44,076 nucleotides of DNA from Octopus sinensis. Lineage: Eukaryota. How positions within the stretch are numbered: the first letter of the stretch is position 1; the number at the start of each line of letters is the position of its first letter. The stretch is from NCBI RefSeq assembly GCF_006345805.1, contig NW_021834742.1, positions 1 through 44,076 on the forward strand. Reading direction: 5' to 3'. Below the pieces are notes generated by a model, which was not told the origin of the DNA, ran no database searches, and worked only from the letters and a program-made list of their open reading frames with translations. The position numbers and the translations under genes were made by a program. Of this stretch, positions 1,115 through 41,353 are shown piece after piece.

Positions 1115-2157
1115 TTTCAAAACCTTGTCAGCCACAACTGAAATAGTGATGCTGCCTTCCTTCCATAACTAAACACTCCATTGAAAGCACCTCCCTCCTT
1201 CCATAATACACTATTGATATCTTTGTCTCCTTCCATAGCTAAAAGTCCTATTGATGTCACCGTCTTAAATAAATAAACACTGTTTACACTAGTCACTATT
1301 TCCATCATAAAATGCGCCAATGCTACTGTTGCGATCACTCTTTCCTTCAATACTTAACTACGCTATTCATATCTATTCCATCTTCCATAAACTGAACATT
1401 CTATTGACATCATTCTCTCCTTCCGTACCTGGACTTCGAATTTCTACCACTCTCTCCTTCCATAGTTCAACAACTTAACGACACCACTTTCATCTTCCAT
1501 AAGAAGCAATTCATTGATATCTTTCTCTCTTCCATAAACACCCTATTGAAACTTTTCTCTTTACACTGACATCAATCACTGCTTCCATAACAAAATATCC
1601 TATTGATAGTACTTTGTCTTTCCATAATTAAGTAACTTTTTGGTACTTCTCTTCTTCCATAAACGAACATCATATTTATGTTGTTCCATAAACTGGTATG
1701 TTCTTCCCATTCCGCCTCTTCCATCAACTGGTGTGATGCTGGTATGATGTTCCATAAACGAAGATTAAACCAGCATTTCCTTTCATATTTAAATACCCTG
1801 TTGATACTACGTTCTCCTCCCATAGTTAAACACCCTGTTGATACTTCTTTCCTTCCATAAGCAAACATCCTATTGCTGCCCTTTCTATGCATAGCTAAGC
1901 ATTATATAGATGTCATCTCTCCAACTATAATTAAACGCCCTATTGATATTCCCTATTTAAAGAACTTTTTGATGTCACTCACCCTTCCACAGTGAAACAC
2001 CCTGTTGATAGTTCTCTCCTTCCGTAACTGTTGACATCACCCTTTCTTTCCATAGTTAAAAACTATATTGATGTCACTCTTCTTCCATAATCAAACACCC
2101 TATTGATACCCATCTCTCCTTTCATAATTAAACATTCTTCTTATATCCTTCTCTCCT
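1115..2157. repeat. Degenerate ~35-bp minisatellite, roughly 29 units
   Basis: Recurring AAACACCCTATTGAT...CTCTCCTTCCATAATT; ttcc(a/g)(t/c)a-type anchors at 1985, 2020, 2048, 2083 and 2120 (periods 35, 28, 35, 37). Confidence 0.85.
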
Positions 2158-2298
2158 TCTACCAAATCCACTCACAAGGCTTTGGTCGGCTCGATGTTAT
2201 AGTAGAAGACAGTTGCCCAAGGTGCCACGCAGTGGGACTGAACCCGGAACCATGTGGCTGGTAAGCAAGCTACTTACCACACAGCCACTCCTACGCCT
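2158..2298 (-). mobile_element. CORE-type tRNA SINE (family A), 5' part
   Basis: Minus strand ggcgtaggagtggctgtgtggtaagtagc (A box), ggttccgggttcagtccc (B box), accttgggcaa (CORE-like); matches the 37826 copy. Confidence 0.9.
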
Positions 2299-19550: not shown

Positions 19551-19886
19551 TCTCTATATATAAACGGCAAAATGTCTGTGTGTATGTCCTTTATACAAAT
19601 CCATAAGTTTTCAGATAGAGGTCTCACCCTTTCTATGGTCATTCAAAACCGTCCAAGGGTAGTCGTGCACATCTTTACATTTCCCCAGTCATCTCGCAAA
19701 GCCATTAAAAAATCAATAGAAGTGACTTTTTTGTGAATTTTCTATCCAAAACCCAATCAAAATGAATTTTCTATCCAAAACCCAATCAAAATGCCCGAAA
19801 CTTGATACGCCAATTGAATGTCAGCTAGCTGTATGTGATTGGTTGGAGATTTGGACAGTACTCGCGTTGCCGGGTCATAGTGCTAG
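19551..19886 (+). mobile_element. Non-autonomous Helitron (336 bp) with an internal 29-bp tandem duplication
   Basis: A|TC start (tctctatatataaacggc), 3' actcgcgttgccgggt hairpin then CTAG|T; removing it restores cct att aca tgc (PITC) in the R4 relic with no TSD; duplication units at 19734 and 19763. Confidence 0.9.
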
Positions 19887-21080: not shown

Positions 21081-21302
21081 ACTCTTTTACTCTCTTTTAC
21101 TCTCTTTTACTCTTTTACTTGTTTCAGTCATTTGACTGCGGCCATGCTGGAGCAACTCGACCCCGGGACTTATTCTTTTGTAAGCCCAGTACTTATTCTA
21201 TCAGTCTCTTTTGCCGAACCGCTAAGTAACGGGGACATAAACACACCAGCATCAGCTGTCAAGCAATGCTAGGGGGACAACACAGACACACAAACACACA
21301 CA

Positions 21303-21340
<38 letters not shown>

Positions 21341-21495
21341 TACGACGGGCTTCTTTCAGTTTCCGTCTACCAAATCCACTCACAAGGCTTTGGTCGGCCT
21401 TAGGCTATAGTAGAAGACACTTGCCCAAGGTGCCACGCAGTGGAACTGAACCCGGAACCATGTGGTTGGTAAACAAGCTACTTACCACACAGCCA
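21081..21495 (-). mobile_element. CORE-type SINE (family A), near full length
   Basis: Head, CORE-like segment, central (AT/GT) microsatellite, 3' half ending aaatgactgaaacaagtaaaagagtaaaagag. Confidence 0.92.
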
Positions 21496-24140: not shown

Positions 24141-24654
24141 AGGGCTTTTGTCTTGGTATAAAAGATGGGCTTTTGTCTTGGTATAAAAGATGGGCTTTTG
24201 TCTTGGTATAAAAGATGGGCTACAGCAAATATTCTGCTCAATACCACAGATTTGCTTGTCAGTTGTTTGACCTTAACCAGTTGAGCATGTCCCTTATTGG
24301 CTGACGATATGTGCATCTCTGATCACGAGCAGAAGTAGTGGGGGAGTATCATAGCCATGTGTTGAGAGGGATTCTTTGAGGTTTGAATAATTCACCTCTG
24401 GAAACATGGGCGGTTCTTTCAACATCCTTAAACAACCCTTATTCAGGGACCTTTTGAGCGGGATGGGCTACTCAACCTGAAGACCTGCAAGGTCATGTGC
24501 TGTTTATCTTGATATGAGATCACAATGTCGCGCACATATGGCTGTGATGCATGTGCCTGGTGTACCCTTATCAGACGGGTAGTCATGATGGGTATATTGG
24601 GCTTCGTATATTTTACCCCAGTGTCACTTTGATGGCATGAACTGCTCTCTCACA
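24141..24654 (+). mobile_element. 5'-truncated 3' end of a non-LTR retrotransposon (probably R4/Dong 3' UTR), copy 1
   Basis: Shares its 3' end ...gatggcatg(a/c)a(c/t)tgctctctcac with copy 2; followed by (TAA)n and embedded in (TAA)n; 25-bp unit x3 at the 5' end. Confidence 0.6.
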
Positions 24655-26916: not shown

Positions 26917-27330
26917 GTATATATGCATGTATGTATATATCTATTTATATATGTGTGTATATTTATGCATGTACACACACTTACACACACACACTCATAT
27001 ATATACACATTTATATACACATTTATACACATTTATACACATTTATATACACATTTATACACATTTATATACACATTTATACACATTTATATACACATTT
27101 ATACACATTTATATACACATTTATACACATTTATACACATTTATATACACATTTATACACATTTATACACATTTATATACACATTTATACACATTTATAC
27201 ACATTTATATACACATTTATACACATTTATATGTGTGTATGTAATTATGTATATATGCATGTATGTATATATCTATTTATATATGTGTGTGTGTATTTAT
27301 GCATGTACACACACTTACACACACACACAC
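26917..27330. repeat. 10/12-bp minisatellite flanked by ~80-bp direct repeats
   Basis: (AT)0-1 ACACATTTAT units at 27001-27230; flanks atatgcatgtatgtatatatctattta...cacttacacac at 26921 and 27253 (period 332). Confidence 0.85.
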
Positions 27331-30624: not shown

Positions 30625-30781
30625 GTGTATCTGTGTTTGTCCCCACCAACATCGCATAAGTGACCGATAGAATAAATACTAGGCTTACAAAGAATAACTC
30701 CTGGGGTCGATTTGATTCGACTAAAGGTGGTGCTCCAATATGGCCACAGTCAAATGACTGAAACAAGTAAAAGAATAAAAG
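30625..30781 (+). mobile_element. Family A SINE 3' half with an internal deletion
   Basis: gtgtttgtcccc...gaccgatagaataaatactaggcttac...caaatgactgaaacaagtaaaag. Confidence 0.85.
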
Positions 30782-30900
30782 TATATATGTATTTCTTGTT
30801 TTATTTGACCTTTCCCTCTGCATTTCGTTGCTGGAGAACTGCGTTCTTATGTGTTCCATCGTGGTAGCAGTGATGTATTTCATTCTAATTTTTTTTTTGC

Positions 30901-31303
30901 TTGTTTCAGTCATTTGACTGCGGCCATGCTGGAGCACTGCCTTTAGTCGAGCAAATCGACCACGGGACTTATTCTTTGTAAGCCCAGTACTTATTCTATC
31001 GGCCTCTTTTGCCGAACCGCTAAGTGACGGGGACGTAAACACACCAGCATCGGTTGTCAAGCAATGCTAGGGGGACAAACACAGACACACAGACACATAC
31101 ACACACACACACACACATATGTATATATATACATATATACGACAGGCTTCTTTCAGTTTCTGTCTACGAAATCTACTCACAAGGCATTGGTCGACCCGGG
31201 GCTATAGCAGAAGACACTTGCCCAAGATGTCACGCAGTGGGACTGAACCCGGAAGCATGTGGTTGGTTAGCAAGCTACTTACCACACAACCACTTCTGCG
31301 CCT
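30901..31303 (-). mobile_element. Family A SINE, full length
   Basis: Complete head-to-tail match to the 21081-21495 and 37826-39982 copies. Confidence 0.92.
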
Positions 31304-36500: not shown

Positions 36501-37057
36501 CATGGTGGCTGGCCCCCTCGTTATCGAGTATGGCCATTGCACGAAGCTTGATCAATGTTGTTATCGTGCAATACCTGTGCAAGAAGATATTTTTTAAAGT
36601 GAGGAAAGGCTGTGCACTGAGTCAATCCCACTCACTAAGCAACAGCAGTCATAATCCGAAAAGAAGAACAAGTCAACGTCATCGGTAACCACTGAGCCGC
36701 AGGTTTTATGTCGGAGTTATCCCAGTTTCCTGAGTTACCTTCTCCTAGAAGGATGCCCTAACAAAGGCTAGGAGTCCTTTACTCCCAATGGTTTAACCGC
36801 ACGATCGGGTATTCAGTCCGATTATTTCTATGTCCCCGCGCATGATACAGCCTTAAGACATTTATTGGATGGCCGTTGACTCTCAAGAGTTCCTCCGCCC
36901 TTTGACGGGTTTTGTTTTTCATCCCGCAGGGTGTCCAATAAACACCCTCCTCACCAAGCAGACTTGGTGGGGTTGCCGGTTTAGTCGCCGACGACCCGAC
37001 CATGCAACAGGTTGTACTGGGTTACATGTTACCGGCAGCACTCGAAAGTGACCTGAC
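36501..37057 (-). mobile_element. Bipartite non-autonomous RTE derivative (5' UTR joined to 3' UTR, no ORF)
   Basis: 5' part has RTE-type UTR motifs (gactaa, ttctaggagaaggtaactc); the last 49 nt match the 3' UTR at 33921-33968; (CATA)n on both sides. Confidence 0.7.
36974..37057 (-). ncRNA. Candidate HDV-like ribozyme
   Basis: P1 gtcaggt/acctgtt with a G.U first pair, J1/2 hairpin cact-ttcg-agtg, P2 tgccggt/accggca, P3 tgta/taca, J4/2 C-TAA; several non-canonical features. Confidence 0.45.
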
Positions 37058-37300
37058 ATAACATACATGCAGGCATACATACATACATACATACATACAT
37101 ACATACATACACACACACACATGCATACATACATACATACATACAAATATACATACACACGTACTTATATATATGTATCTCTATATGTGTGGTGTGTTTA
37201 TGTTTGTGTGTGTTTGTGAACATGAGTGTTTAGTCATTAACGCGATATAAATAATATCTTATAGATAGTTTCACACGAATATTGACACTGACTATAAACA

Positions 37301-37372
<72 letters not shown>

Positions 37373-37825
37373 GCGTTTTATAGAGAAATAGGCACATAAA
37401 TAGACGGTCAGTGACATATTTGAATACATCGATGAATAGATATCGCTTAGCTATCAGATAACAAATAACTTATATTTGATATGACGCCGGCAGACGATAT
37501 TCTTGGATGTGTGGGATTATTTACAGGAAGATTGAAAACATAAACGAACGGTAATCGAAAATATTAACAGCTACAACAGCAACAACGACAACAACAACAC
37601 CAAAGACAGTCACGACAAAAGCAACAGCAAGAAAAACATTAATGACAAGACTATATATAGTAATCAGAACAACACGAATATTAACAAGAGCAACAACGTA
37701 AACAACAGTAATGAAGGCATCATCTATTATAGTGATGACGACAACGTGAAGAACAGTAAGAATAGTTACAACTACAATGATACGAAAAAATAGTATGAGA
37801 GATATGAACAAGAAAGACATGAACA

Positions 37826-38084
37826 GGCGCAGGAGTGGCTGTGTGGTAAGTAGCTTGCTTACCAACCACGTGGTTCCGGGCTCAGTCCCACTGCGTTAGT
37901 ACCTTAGGCAAGTGTCTTCTACTATAGCCTCGGGCCGACCAAAGCCTTGTGAGTGGATTTGGTAGACGGAAACTGAGAGAAGCCTGTCGTATATATGTAT
38001 ATGTATACATATATGTGTGTGTATATATGTATATATGTATATACGTATATATCTATATCTATATCTATATCTATCTATATATAT
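37826..38084 (+). mobile_element. Family A SINE 5' half plus central microsatellite (split copy)
   Basis: ggcgcaggagtggctgtgtggtaag...gaaactgagagaagcctgtcgt, then (AT/ATATCT)n. Confidence 0.92.
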
Positions 38085-39638
38085 AATTTACAAGATAAAG
38101 GCAAAAGAAAAATTCTAATGCCAAATATGCCGAAAAAAAGACAAAAATTGTCAATAACCATTTTAATTTGTGCGTCTCGAAACAAACCGATAGAAATTTC
38201 TAAAAATCCGTTATTACCGTATTGGTCCAATTTCGGGGTTAATTCATAAGAATTTTCCCCTCTTCAGCGATAAATACGTGAGATATAAGTGAAATACTTA
38301 CTCATACCCATGGAAAAAGCTAGCACCAAGTCCCGAGCAGACCTAAGTACCCCAAATATATCCAAAATAGAAAATCTTCGGCACATCTCGAGACACGTGT
38401 GATTCGAACTAGAAACTTTCACAGAGTGAGAGATTCCGGAAGTGAACACTATTAAATTTATAACTAATGTAGGATAAAAAATTTTTCGGGAAAAAAATTT
38501 TATCAATGGCCAGCATATCAAAAAATACGTTTAAAGGTTAAATTTATATATAATTTACAAGATAAGGGCAAAAGAAAAATTCTAATGCCAAATATGCCGA
38601 AAAAAAGACAAAAATTGTCAATAACCATTTTAATTTGTGCGTCTCGAAACAAACCGATAGAAATTTCTAAAAAATCCGATATTACCATATTGGTCCAATT
38701 TCGGAGTTAATTCATAAGAATTTTCCCCTCTTCAGTGATAAATACGTTCCTTTTGTTCGTAACTCTACTAGAACTCAGCAGCCAAATTAGAAAATTCTTT
38801 ATTTCCTCTTTTCTTGCCTTGCCCTCATCCACATACCTCCCTCTTTTTCTTTTACTTCCTCCCATCATCAGCATCTGGGGTACTTAGGTCTGCTAGGGAC
38901 TTAGTGCTTGCTTTTTCCATGGGTATGAGTAAGTATTTCACTTATATCTCACGTATTTATCACTGAAGAGGGGAAAATTCTTATGAATTAACCCCGAAAT
39001 TGGACCAATACGGTAATAACGGATTTTTTAGAAATTTCTATCGGTTTGTTTCGAGACGCACAAATTAAAATGGTTATTGACAATTTTTGTCCTTTTTCGG
39101 CATATTTGGCATTAGAATTATTCTTTTGCCCTTATATTGTAAATTATTTATAAATTCAACCTTTAAAGGTATTTTTTGATATGCTGGCCATTGATAAAAA
39201 TTTTTTCCGGGAAAAAAATTTTATCCTACATTAGTTATAAATTAAATAGTGTTCACTTCCGGAATCTCTCACTCTGTGAAAGTTTCTAGTTCGAATCACA
39301 CGTGTCTCGAGATGTGCCGAAGATTTTCTATTTTGGATATATTTGGGGTACTTAGGTCTGCTCGGGACTTAGTACTTGCTTTTTCCATGGGTATGAGTAA
39401 GTATTTCACTTATATCTCACGTATTTATCGCTGAAGAGGGGGAAATTCTTATGAATTAACCCCGAAATTGGACCAATAACGGATTTTTTAGAAATTTCTA
39501 TCGGTTTGTTTCGAGACACACAAATTAAAATGGTTATTGACAATTTTTGTCTTTTTTTCGGCATATTTGGCATTAGAATTTTTCTTTTGCCCTTATCTAG
39601 CAAATTATTTATAAATTTAACCTTTTATCCTACATTAG

Positions 39639-39641
<3 letters not shown>
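38085..39641. repeat. 1.55-kb inverted repeat built of a 467-bp tandem unit, inserted in a SINE
   Basis: Left arm: unit 38085-38551 plus partial unit 38552-38747. Right arm (reverse complement): 38876-39145, 39146-39607 and a short remnant to 39641. Confidence 0.95.
38746..38877 (-). other. Inverted copy of downstream unique flank 40086-40208
   Basis: Base-for-base reverse complement apart from a 9-nt indel (tcctctttt). Confidence 0.95.
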
Positions 39642-39722
<81 letters not shown>

Positions 39723-39982
39723 ATCTATCTATCTATATATGTGTGTGTGTGTGTGTGTATGCCTGTGTGTCTGTGTTTGTCCCTCTCCAACATCGCTTGA
39801 CAACCGATGCTGGTGTGTTTACGTCCCCGTAACTTAGCGGTTCGGCAAAAGAGACCGATAGAATAAGTACTAGGCTTACAAAGAATAGGTCCTGGGGTCG
39901 ATTTGCTCGACTAAAGGCGGAGCTCCAGCATGGCCGCAGTCAAATGACTGAAACAAATAAAAGGGTAAAAAGAGTAAAAAAG
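39642..39982 (+). mobile_element. (TCTA)n tract plus family A SINE 3' half (split copy)
   Basis: gtgtctgtgtttgtccc...gcagtcaaatgactgaaacaaataaaagggtaaaaagag completes the 37826 head. Confidence 0.92.
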
Positions 39983-40430
39983 TGCCTACGGTGTTAATTT
40001 CGCTGTTGTTGTTGTTATTGTTGTTAATGTTGTTGCTGGAAGTGGAAGTGGTGGCAGAGATGGTTATAGTCATAAAGAAGACCATCAGATGCTGATGATG
40101 GGAGGAAGTAAAAGAAAAAGAGGGAGGTATGTGGATGAGGGCAAGGCAAGAATAAAGAATTTTCTAATTTGGCTGCTGAGTTCTAGTAGAGTTACGAACA
40201 AAAGGAACAACAGCAACACAAACCGCAACAACAACAGCAAAAACAAAAATAACAACAATAGTGACAGCCAAACTGAAATGAAACAAATTCCTTGATACTC
40301 AAGTATGGAATCAAAGAGAAATGGTAATACTTTGATTTATTATGTAAGACATATAATTTACAGCGTTCTTGGGTGCATCTGCTTGGTTGCAAAATCTCTC
40401 TCATGCACGAGCGTACTGACACACACACAC

Positions 40431-40811: not shown

Positions 40812-41010
40812 TTTTATCTTTTTTATTTGATTCAGTCATTTGACTGTGGCTATGTTAGGACATCGCCTTGAATGGTTTTAGTTAAACAAATCGATCCCAG
40901 GATATTTTTTGAAGCCGAACCACTAAGTTACAGGGACGAAAACACAAACTGAATCCGTAACCAAGTGGTTGGTAAGCAAGCTACTTACCACACAGCCACT
41001 CCTGTGCCTA
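40812..41010 (-). mobile_element. Family A SINE with multiple internal deletions
   Basis: ttcagtcatttgactgtggc (tail) and gctacttaccacacagccactcc (head) lie only ~200 bp apart. Confidence 0.75.
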
Positions 41011-41242: not shown

Positions 41243-41353
41243 AGTCGGCCCGAGGCTATAGTAGAAGACACTTGCCCAAGGTGTCACGCAGTGGGACTGA
41301 ACCCAGAACCATGTGGCTGGTAAACAAGCTACTTACCACACAGCCACTCCTTT
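41243..41353 (-). mobile_element. Family A SINE 5' part
   Basis: gtcggcccgaggctatagtagaagacacttgcccaagg...cacacagccactcct. Confidence 0.88.

What the first reader, a model, noticed from the sequence alone, without database searches (positions are those of the whole stretch)
38085..39641. 1.55-kb palindrome of an unrecognised 467-bp unit splits a SINE in two
Seen: the family A SINE head (37826-37990) and tail (39741-39982) are 1.75 kb apart, whereas in intact copies (21081-21495, 30901-31303) they adjoin a short microsatellite. The insert is a left arm (full unit 38085-38551 plus positions 1-196), a 130-bp spacer and an inverted right arm (positions 270 to 1, a full unit, and a 30-bp remnant). 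I see no ORF, no TIR/TSD pair and no match to any other repeat in the window. Each unit carries private differences (e.g. a 9-bp deletion near 39478), which argues against a simple read fold-back. Inference: either a foldback-type element with tandem-array arms, or a satellite array locally inverted. If transcribed it would give a hairpin stem of several hundred bp, relevant to A-to-I editing or endo-siRNA in coleoids.
Basis: partly seen in the sequence, partly recalled or inferred. Interest (0 to 1): 0.8.

Follow-up and report, generated by a model that had tools for sequence, protein, structure and literature searches.

The report
Inverted repeat insert splitting an octopus SINE
A 1.56-kb near-palindrome made of an unidentified 467-bp repeat really does sit inside the central microsatellite of an octopus SINE, but its "spacer" is an exact inverted copy of DNA 1.2 kb downstream, so it looks like a scar of DNA-break repair rather than a transposon or a functional element.

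Summary
A 467-bp unit (U) forms a left arm of 1.4 units and an inverted right arm of about 1.7 units. These lie between the collinear head and tail of one octopus SINE.

The spacer is not anonymous: 38746-38877 is the reverse complement of window 40086-40208, with 123 of 123 aligned bases identical and one 9-bp indel.

Other findings:
- All five internal junctions carry 2-7 bp of microhomology.
- The outermost ends of the insert are not inverted repeats of each other, and there is no non-repeated terminal domain.
- The four U copies are equidistant, at 2.6-4.2% substitutions. Mirror partners are no closer than other pairs, so the identical spacer is younger (P about 0.01-0.02).

Best reading, at about 0.5 confidence: an inverted pair of short U arrays was captured at a break in the SINE's TA/TATC microsatellite, and the palindrome centre was patched, later or in the same event, by microhomology-mediated copying of nearby flank.

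A rearranged foldback transposon and an assembly error remain possible. U's copy number could not be tested because no octopus genome was searchable. There is no evidence of transcription, and Pol III starting from the SINE would stop 76 nt into the insert. Interest is modest.

The parts
37826..37990 (+). Head of the split SINE (tRNA-derived).
   Evidence: 88-92% identity to intact copies in the window and in O. vulgaris locus L001.
37991..38077 (.). Left microsatellite. The canonical SINE centre (TA)n/(TG)n changes into TATATC/TATC repeats.
   Evidence: Compared with the centres of 7 intact SINE copies, which are (TA)n(TG)n with no TATC.
38085..38551 (+). L1, a full 467-bp unit (u1-467). The 7 nt TATATAT at 38078-38084 are shared with the (TA)n flank (junction J1 microhomology).
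38552..38747 (+). L2, a partial unit (u1-195).
38746..38877 (-). Spacer S', a templated inverted copy of window 40086-40208. 123 of 123 aligned bases are identical, with an extra 9 nt at 38802-38810. It overlaps L2 by GT and R1 by TG (2-bp microhomologies).
   Evidence: (I8, I9).
38873..39145 (-). R1, a partial unit (u273->1). Its inner 78 nt have no partner in the left arm.
39146..39606 (-). R2, a full unit (u467->1) with a private 8-bp deletion (u129-136).
39607..39642 (-). R3 remnant: u467->449 joined through TTT to u396->377 (53 bp skipped), then joined through TAT to (TATC)n.
39643..39740 (.). Right microsatellite, (TATC)~24. It has the same strand sense as the TATC repeats on the left, so it is not part of the palindrome.
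39741..39982 (+). (TG)n followed by the tail of the split SINE, collinear with the head.
   Evidence: 82-95% identity to intact copies.
40086..40208 (+). F, the flank segment that is the presumed template of the spacer. Apart from S' it has no other copy in the window or in L001.

Best explanation
This is a repair-generated insertion, not a mobile or functional element.

Step 1 (inferred). The SINE's central TA/TATC microsatellite broke. The break was sealed by capture of about 1.4 kb of a 467-bp tandem repeat (U) in the form of two short arrays in inverted orientation. The source may have been an extrachromosomal or template-switch-derived inverted dimer of a satellite-like family located elsewhere. 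The outer joints used 3-7 bp of microhomology with the microsatellite.

Step 2 (the structure is shown; the mechanism is inferred). The centre of the resulting palindrome broke, or the polymerase switched template there. About 125 nt were copied from the opposite strand of flanking DNA 1.2-1.5 kb downstream (40086-40208). This piece entered and left through 2-bp microhomologies (GT, TG) and left the arms unequal (u195 against u273).

The result is a 663-bp imperfect inverted repeat (about 95% complementary) with a 203-nt asymmetric centre. That configuration is expected to be much more stable than a true palindrome.

Steps 1 and 2 could be one complex event only if the U pieces were copied from already diverged monomers elsewhere. 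I expect no cellular function. The consequences would be limited to possible replication fragility and, only if a Pol II transcript crosses the region, a long dsRNA hairpin.
For: - The spacer is an exact inverted copy of nearby flank, 123/123 with one 9-bp indel. A nearby, opposite-strand donor is the classic signature of template switching.
- All five junctions have short microhomology of 7, 2, 2, 3 and 3 bp.
- The very ends carry no TIR. There is no ORF, Pfam, Rfam or tRNA signal.
- Joining the two flanks restores a continuous TATC/TA tract inside the canonical SINE centre.
- A second SINE copy, L001:19322-19868, also carries a foreign insert of about 150 bp in its central (TA)n, so this microsatellite is a recurrent break or insertion site.
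- The U copies are equidistant at 2.6-4.2% and mirror partners are not closer. Zero substitutions in 123 bp of S'/F has P about 0.01-0.02 at that rate (recalculated with 3.1-3.5%). The spacer is therefore younger than the arms, or the arms were never identical.
- Literature: complex insertions at breaks are often two pieces from one locus in inverted orientation, joined by microhomology (PMC11724301). Palindromes are revised by centre breaks, and spacers suppress hairpin or cruciform formation (PMC3300023).
Against: - No donor for U could be found, because no octopus genome was searchable. U being a satellite located elsewhere is therefore assumed, not shown.
- The captured arms (660-770 bp) are far longer than the inverted insertions documented in yeast (medians of 50-150 bp).
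- Microhomologies of 2-3 bp in AT-rich sequence are weak evidence individually.
- The outer ends of the two arms lie within about 30 bp of the same unit position. A transposon with defined ends would also produce that.
- The structure rests on a single assembly.
Confidence: 0.5

Rival explanations
1. A rearranged, non-autonomous foldback-type DNA transposon (like FB, Galileo or Tetris) whose inverted arms are tandem arrays of U. It inserted into the microsatellite and its centre was later damaged.
For: - The arms are inverted and built of tandem units, as in Tetris, whose TIRs carry 220-bp repeats (PMC4079207).
- The outer ends of both arms lie within about 30 bp of the same unit position.
- No coding capacity is expected for a non-autonomous element.
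- A (TA)n/TATC target could hide a target-site duplication.
Against: - The outermost 45 nt of the two ends are not significantly complementary: score 10 against a shuffle mean of 9.5.
- There is no non-repeated terminal (flanking) domain outside the repeats, unlike Tetris.
- The middle piece is a copy of local flank, not element sequence.
- No second copy was found in 64 kb of octopus DNA that holds 12 or more SINE copies.
Confidence: 0.2
2. An assembly artefact. Long-read chimeras or a mis-join through shared microsatellites placed a U palindrome, and an inverted scrap of flank, inside the SINE.
For: - If the window comes from the O. vulgaris reference, that assembly was built from Nanopore plus 10x reads (PMC13282606), and Nanopore reads can contain fold-back chimeras.
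- Both outer joints lie in microsatellites, where mis-joins are easiest.
- An exact (123/123) inverted local copy next to arms that are 3-4% diverged is odd.
Against: - A fold-back read would mirror the flanks. Here the flanks are the collinear head and tail of one SINE.
- The arms differ by 5-16 substitutions per pair, including CpG transitions, rather than by indel noise.
- The arms are out of register and separated by a non-palindromic spacer.
- An insert of 1.56 kb is easily spanned by single long reads.
Confidence: 0.13
3. In-situ origin. A direct U array first sat at this site, and the opposite arm was copied from it locally in the same template-switch event that copied F. This corresponds to the reader's 'satellite array locally inverted'.
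For: - The one parsimony-informative site (u185) shows the mirror pattern L1=R2, L2=R1.
- The event that produced S' demonstrably used local templates on the opposite strand.
Against: If L had been copied from R in the event that produced S', the mirror partners should be as identical as S' and F. Instead they differ by 3.1-3.5%, no less than non-mirror pairs at 2.6-4.2%.
Confidence: 0.12

Closest known systems
Complex templated or 'distant inverted' insertions at double-strand breaks, and MMBIR/FoSTeS template switching (yeast: PMC11724301; cancer: PMC8421209)
   Same: Several pieces are joined by 2-7 bp microhomologies. Two pieces come from one source in inverted orientation. One short piece is copied from the opposite strand of nearby DNA. 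There is no target-site duplication and no TIR.
   Different: The arms here are 660-770 bp, against medians of 50-150 bp in yeast. The source of the main pieces is unknown. This is a germline-fixed event in an octopus rather than an experimental or somatic one.
Centre-break palindrome revision (Cunningham et al. 2003, as cited in PMC3300023)
   Same: An asymmetric central loss with filler at the symmetry centre converts a palindrome into a spaced, more stable inverted repeat.
   Different: It is known from transgene palindromes in mouse cells. Here the history is only inferred from the spacer being younger than the arms.
Tetris / FB / Galileo foldback transposons (PMC4079207)
   Same: Long inverted arms contain AT-rich tandem repeats, there is a non-coding middle piece, and there is a link to satellite-like arrays.
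   Different: There is no conserved non-repeated terminal domain, no matching termini and no demonstrable target duplication. The middle piece is local flank. Only one copy has been seen.
Dispersed short satellite arrays and repeat-carrying Helentrons (HINE/pearl) of bivalve molluscs (PMC5139131, PMC7492417)
   Same: A mollusc genome carries a short array of 1-2 satellite-like monomers outside heterochromatin, with abrupt junctions next to a microsatellite and no target duplication.
   Different: HINE repeats always have one orientation between defined left and right modules with subterminal inverted repeats and a 3' palindrome. Here the arrays are inverted and no such modules exist.

Membership tests
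Foldback transposon (FB/Tetris/Galileo type) | Long inverted arms that contain tandem repeats | tested here: met
   Arms of 663 and 770 bp built from 467-bp units, 94.9% complementary.
Foldback transposon (FB/Tetris/Galileo type) | Outermost termini are inverted repeats of each other, or there is a conserved terminal domain outside the repeats | tested here: not met
   The terminal 45 nt give an alignment score of 10 against a shuffle mean of 9.5 (44% of shuffles reach it). The arms start directly in U, and the right end carries a 36-nt rearranged remnant.
Foldback transposon (FB/Tetris/Galileo type) | Target-site duplication of 7-10 bp | tested here: inconclusive
   Both flanks are TATC/TA microsatellite in the same sense, so any short duplication would be invisible.
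Foldback transposon (FB/Tetris/Galileo type) | Several dispersed copies sharing the same ends | not testable with these tools
   No octopus genome is searchable by DNA. There were no further copies in the 44-kb window or in the 20-kb O. vulgaris locus. The protein database is uninformative here: the control SINE ORF gave only 2 hits.
Foldback transposon (FB/Tetris/Galileo type) | The middle domain belongs to the element | tested here: not met
   The middle piece is the exact reverse complement of window 40086-40208.
Repeat-carrying Helentron (HINE/pearl) | Tandem repeats in a single orientation between left and right modules with subterminal inverted repeats and a 3' palindrome | tested here: not met
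   The arrays are inverted. The sequence between U and the microsatellites is nil, so no modules exist. Definition taken from PMC7492417.
Satellite DNA | Head-to-tail monomers of constant length | tested here: met
   Period of 467-468 (or 460-461 across the 8-bp deletion), with 1.4 and about 1.7 units per arm.
Satellite DNA | Long arrays or high copy number in the genome | not testable with these tools
   No octopus genome or read set is available. Exact k-mer scans of the metagenome, viral and prokaryote collections gave 0 hits.
Microhomology-mediated templated insertion | Short microhomology at every junction | tested here: met
   TATATAT, GT, TG, TTT and TAT at the five junctions.
Microhomology-mediated templated insertion | An identifiable donor for the inserted pieces | tested here: inconclusive
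   A donor was found for the spacer, 1.2 kb away on the opposite strand with 123/123 identity. No donor was found for the U pieces.
Fold-back inverted duplication of chromosomal DNA (PMC3907307 type) or fold-back sequencing read | The mirror symmetry extends into the flanking unique sequence, and the spacer is contiguous with the arms | tested here: not met
   The flanks are the collinear SINE head and tail. The TATC repeats have the same sense on both sides. The spacer is unrelated to U.
Octopus tRNA-derived SINE with central (TA)n(TG)n | Head and tail both match intact copies, in the same order and orientation | tested here: met
   An ORF from the SINE tail hits an Octopus vulgaris protein at 95% identity.

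The most novel reading that the evidence does not exclude
U is the arm repeat of a so far undescribed cephalopod foldback transposon family, or of a satellite that spreads as inverted dimers. Such a family would seed long perfect-stem hairpins across the octopus genome, and where Pol II transcribes them they would supply substrates for the heavy A-to-I editing or small-RNA pathways of coleoids.
Probability: 0.12. Interest if true: 0.55.

Novelty: new member of a known kind. Interest (0 to 1): 0.27.

Why it matters
If the reading is right, this locus is a clean, datable natural example in a cephalopod of two processes known mainly from yeast, mouse transgenes and tumours. One is capture of inverted repeat DNA at a broken microsatellite. 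The other is patching of a palindrome centre with locally templated DNA.

It also marks the central microsatellite of the most abundant octopus SINE as a recurrent break or insertion site. That bears on how the very repeat-rich octopus genome rearranges.

It does not by itself reveal a new element class or a function. Its practical value is as a test locus for assembly accuracy, and as a pointer to an unannotated 467-bp repeat family that should be looked up in octopod repeat libraries.

Tried and rejected
- **Protein searches with U ORFs.** The 85-aa and 54-aa ORFs gave no hits. The control, an ORF from the roughly 10^5-copy SINE, returned only two proteins. The database therefore barely represents octopus non-coding DNA, and this negative result is uninformative.
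- **Exact-product look-ups.** Six ORFs in or spanning the junctions were looked up to find the locus in other assemblies. None is on record.
- **Exact k-mer scans.** Three conserved U k-mers were scanned in the metagenome, viral and prokaryote contig collections, with 0 hits. BLASTN against the plasmid and phage collections also gave no match, so vector, phage or bacterial contamination is excluded.
- **Structured RNA and coding signals.** Rfam and ARAGORN found nothing in U; the sub-threshold miRNA 'hits' at 37986-38071 are microsatellite artefacts. Pfam on six-frame translations found nothing, and the invertebrate mitochondrial code still gives many stops, so a coding NUMT is unlikely.
- **Literature.** There is no cephalopod satellitome paper. 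The 2026 O. vulgaris repeat annotation (PMC13282606) has no satellite or foldback section and no library in its held supplement. A full-text search for U k-mers gave 0 papers.
- **Inversion between S' and F.** I considered recombination between S' and F flipping the segment between them. I rejected it because the flipped state would invert the SINE tail relative to its head.
- **Gene conversion as the reason for S'=F identity.** I consider this unlikely, because the longer and closer U arms were not homogenised.

Full report
**1. What is there**

The region was read directly and analysed with the repeat finder, self-BLAST of 37700-40400 against the window, BLAST of the unit against the region, a MAFFT alignment of all unit copies and an nhmmer profile search.

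A 467-bp unit (U, reference copy 38085-38551) occurs in these pieces:
- L1: u1-467, + strand
- L2: 38552-38747, u1-195, + strand
- R1: 38873-39145, u273->1, - strand
- R2: 39146-39606, u467->1, - strand, with a private 8-bp deletion
- R3: a 36-nt remnant at 39607-39642, made of u467->449 fused to u396->377

The symmetric part, 38078-38747 against 39613-38951, is 94.9% complementary over 672 columns. Folded as RNA, 38085-39584 gives a single stem of about 640 bp with a free energy of -1029 kcal/mol.

**2. The host element and the organism**

The flanks 37826-37990 and 39741-39982 are the head and tail of one tRNA-derived SINE, in the same order and orientation as the intact copies at 21081-21495 and 30901-31303.

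An ORF read from the SINE tail hits a 'hypothetical predicted protein' of Octopus vulgaris at 95% identity. A 20-kb O. vulgaris locus fetched through that protein (L001) carries about seven more copies at 80-95% identity. The window therefore comes from an Octopus or a close relative.

In seven intact copies the centre reads GTCGTATATATGTATAT(AT)n(GT)n...TGTCTGTGTTTGTCCCC, and head and tail are usually 50-70 bp apart. In the split copy the same (TA)n start and (TG)n end are present. Between them lie TATATC/TATC repeats, the 1.56-kb insert and (TATC)~24. The TATC repeats have the same strand sense on both sides, so the mirror symmetry stops exactly at the ends of U.

**3. The spacer is not anonymous**

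The repeat finder paired 38746-38803 and 38806-38877 with 40151-40208 and 40086-40157 in inverted orientation (I8 and I9). Alignment and exact-block matching show two exact blocks:
- 38746-38801 is the reverse complement of 40208-40153 (56 nt)
- 38811-38877 is the reverse complement of 40152-40086 (67 nt)

These are separated by 9 extra nucleotides. In total 123 of 123 aligned bases are identical. This segment (F) lies 104 bp beyond the SINE tail and has no other copy in the window or in L001. The centre of the palindrome is therefore a copy of local flanking DNA taken from the opposite strand.

**4. Junctions**

Each junction was compared with how its two parent sequences continue. Every one shows short overlaps:
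- Left microsatellite to L1: TATATAT
- L2 to S': GT
- S' to R1: TG
- Inside R3: TTT
- R3 to (TATC)n: TAT

The two outermost 45-nt ends are not complementary beyond chance, with a score of 10 against a shuffle mean of 9.5. No non-repeated terminal domain exists.

**5. Relative ages**

Pairwise substitution differences among L1, L2, R1 and R2 are 2.6-4.2%. Mirror partners (L1-R2 at 3.5%, L2-R1 at 3.1%) are no closer than tandem neighbours or cross pairs. Almost all differences are private to one copy and several are CpG transitions. Only one site (u185) is informative, and it shows the mirror pattern.

At 3.1-3.5% divergence, zero substitutions in the 123 nt shared by S' and F has a probability of about 0.01-0.02. 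This leaves two possibilities:
- the spacer was installed later than the arms; or
- the arms were copied from already diverged monomers and were never identical.

Using the calibration quoted in PMC13282606 (Jukes-Cantor 0.09 is about 25 My), arms that started identical would be roughly 4-5 My old. That is younger than the SINE copies, which differ by about 9-12% pairwise. This dating is inference.

**6. What U is not**

- There is no ORF of note.
- There is no Pfam match in ORFs or six-frame translations, and the mitochondrial code still gives many stops.
- There is no Rfam family or tRNA.
- There is no plasmid or phage similarity.
- There are no exact k-mer matches in the metagenome, viral or prokaryote collections.
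- There is no match in full-text literature.

What U is elsewhere in the octopus genome could not be determined, because none of the available collections holds cephalopod DNA in searchable form. The protein-based routes failed as well, and the control shows that this failure is uninformative.

**7. Mechanism**

The combination of features is:
- no TIR at the ends
- no demonstrable target duplication
- five microhomology junctions
- two blocks of one repeat in inverted orientation
- a short block copied from the opposite strand of DNA 1.2-1.5 kb away

This is the pattern of break repair with template switching, not of transposition. In yeast, complex insertions at breaks are most often two pieces of one locus in inverted orientation joined through microhomology, and they can form on extrachromosomal single strands before capture (PMC11724301).

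Palindromes are known to be broken at their centre and stabilised by asymmetric central changes. Spacers of tens of base pairs already suppress hairpin-dependent stalling (PMC3300023 and the work it cites).

My preferred history has two steps. First, an inverted pair of short U arrays was captured in the SINE's microsatellite. Second, the centre was patched with a templated copy of F, leaving arms that end at u195 and u273 and a 203-nt unpaired centre. A single complex event is possible if the U pieces came from diverged monomers.

Supporting the idea that this microsatellite is a weak spot, another SINE copy (L001:19322-19868) has an unrelated insert of about 150 bp in its central (TA)n.

**8. 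Rivals**

*Foldback transposon of the Tetris type.* Tetris has TIRs with 220-bp tandem repeats, a non-repeated terminal domain, a middle domain and 8-10 bp target duplications (PMC4079207). It shares the inverted tandem-repeat arms with this locus. The locus fails on termini and on the middle domain, and copy number is untested. I give it about 0.2.

*Repeat-carrying Helentrons of molluscs.* They keep all repeats in one orientation between defined modules (PMC7492417), so they do not fit.

*Assembly artefact.* It cannot be excluded without reads. A fold-back read would mirror the flanks, which are instead collinear SINE halves, and the arms differ by substitutions rather than indel noise. I give it about 0.13.

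*Purely in-situ copying of one arm from the other in the event that made S'.* This is disfavoured by the 3.1-3.5% mirror-pair divergence next to the identical S'/F pair.

**9. Function**

Nothing indicates one. The hairpin exists only if a transcript crosses the whole insert. A Pol III transcript from the SINE head would terminate at the TTTT at 38161, 76 nt into the insert, with further T-runs at 38253 and 38482. No gene is evident in the 44-kb window, whose long ORFs are all microsatellite translations. The editing and siRNA idea therefore remains untested speculation.

**10. Verdict**

The feature is real and was correctly described, but with one important oversight: the spacer is a local templated copy. 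It is best read as a two-layer repair scar in a fragile SINE microsatellite, which makes it a new example of a known kind of rearrangement. Interest is modest (0.27). It would rise if U turns out to be the arm repeat of a dispersed foldback family in cephalopods.

Noticed in passing
L001:19322-19868 (Octopus vulgaris OX597840.1, about 30.85 Mb): Another copy of the same SINE carries an unrelated insert of about 150 bp in its central (TA)n, with (TA)n on both sides. The SINE's central microsatellite therefore seems to be a recurrent insertion or break site.
   Followed up: partly
window 39983-40208 versus 37559-37720 and 40209-40270: The stretch right after the SINE tail (39993-40040) is GTT-rich, while the outer flanks on both sides are AAC-rich on the + strand. 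The 226-bp block holding F may itself be inverted relative to its surroundings. That would put the spacer copy S' in the 'original' orientation. The sequence is low complexity, so this is unproven.
   Followed up: partly
window 38473-38504 (u389-420) and its copy at 39193-39225: U contains a short self-complementary A/T block (A6T5-CGGG-A7T4). The internal breakpoint of remnant R3 (u396/397) falls inside it.
   Followed up: no
window 38085-38551: U has 32.5% G+C and a CpG observed/expected ratio of 1.38, against 0.76 for the whole window. The sample is small and the difference was not tested for significance.
   Followed up: no
window 37986-38071 and 37036-37223: Sub-threshold Rfam 'miRNA' matches (mir-297, mir-3149, mir-1277 and others, 20-48 bits against gathering scores of 75-100) all fall on TA/TG microsatellite and are artefacts.
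   Followed up: yes
window 24142-24221, 19734-19793, 27002-27231: Three tandem repeats of longer period sit in a window that is otherwise saturated with microsatellites (more than 160 TRF rows in 44 kb): a perfect 25-bp x 3.2, a perfect 29-bp x 2.1, and a 32-bp-period array of 7 copies at 94% matches.
   Followed up: no
window 2154-2298, 30654-30780, 40948-41009, 41244-41351: Further fragments of the same SINE: head-only pieces, and a tail piece lying inverted next to the full copy at 30895-31303. With about 7 copies in 20 kb of L001, this family is very dense.
   Followed up: no
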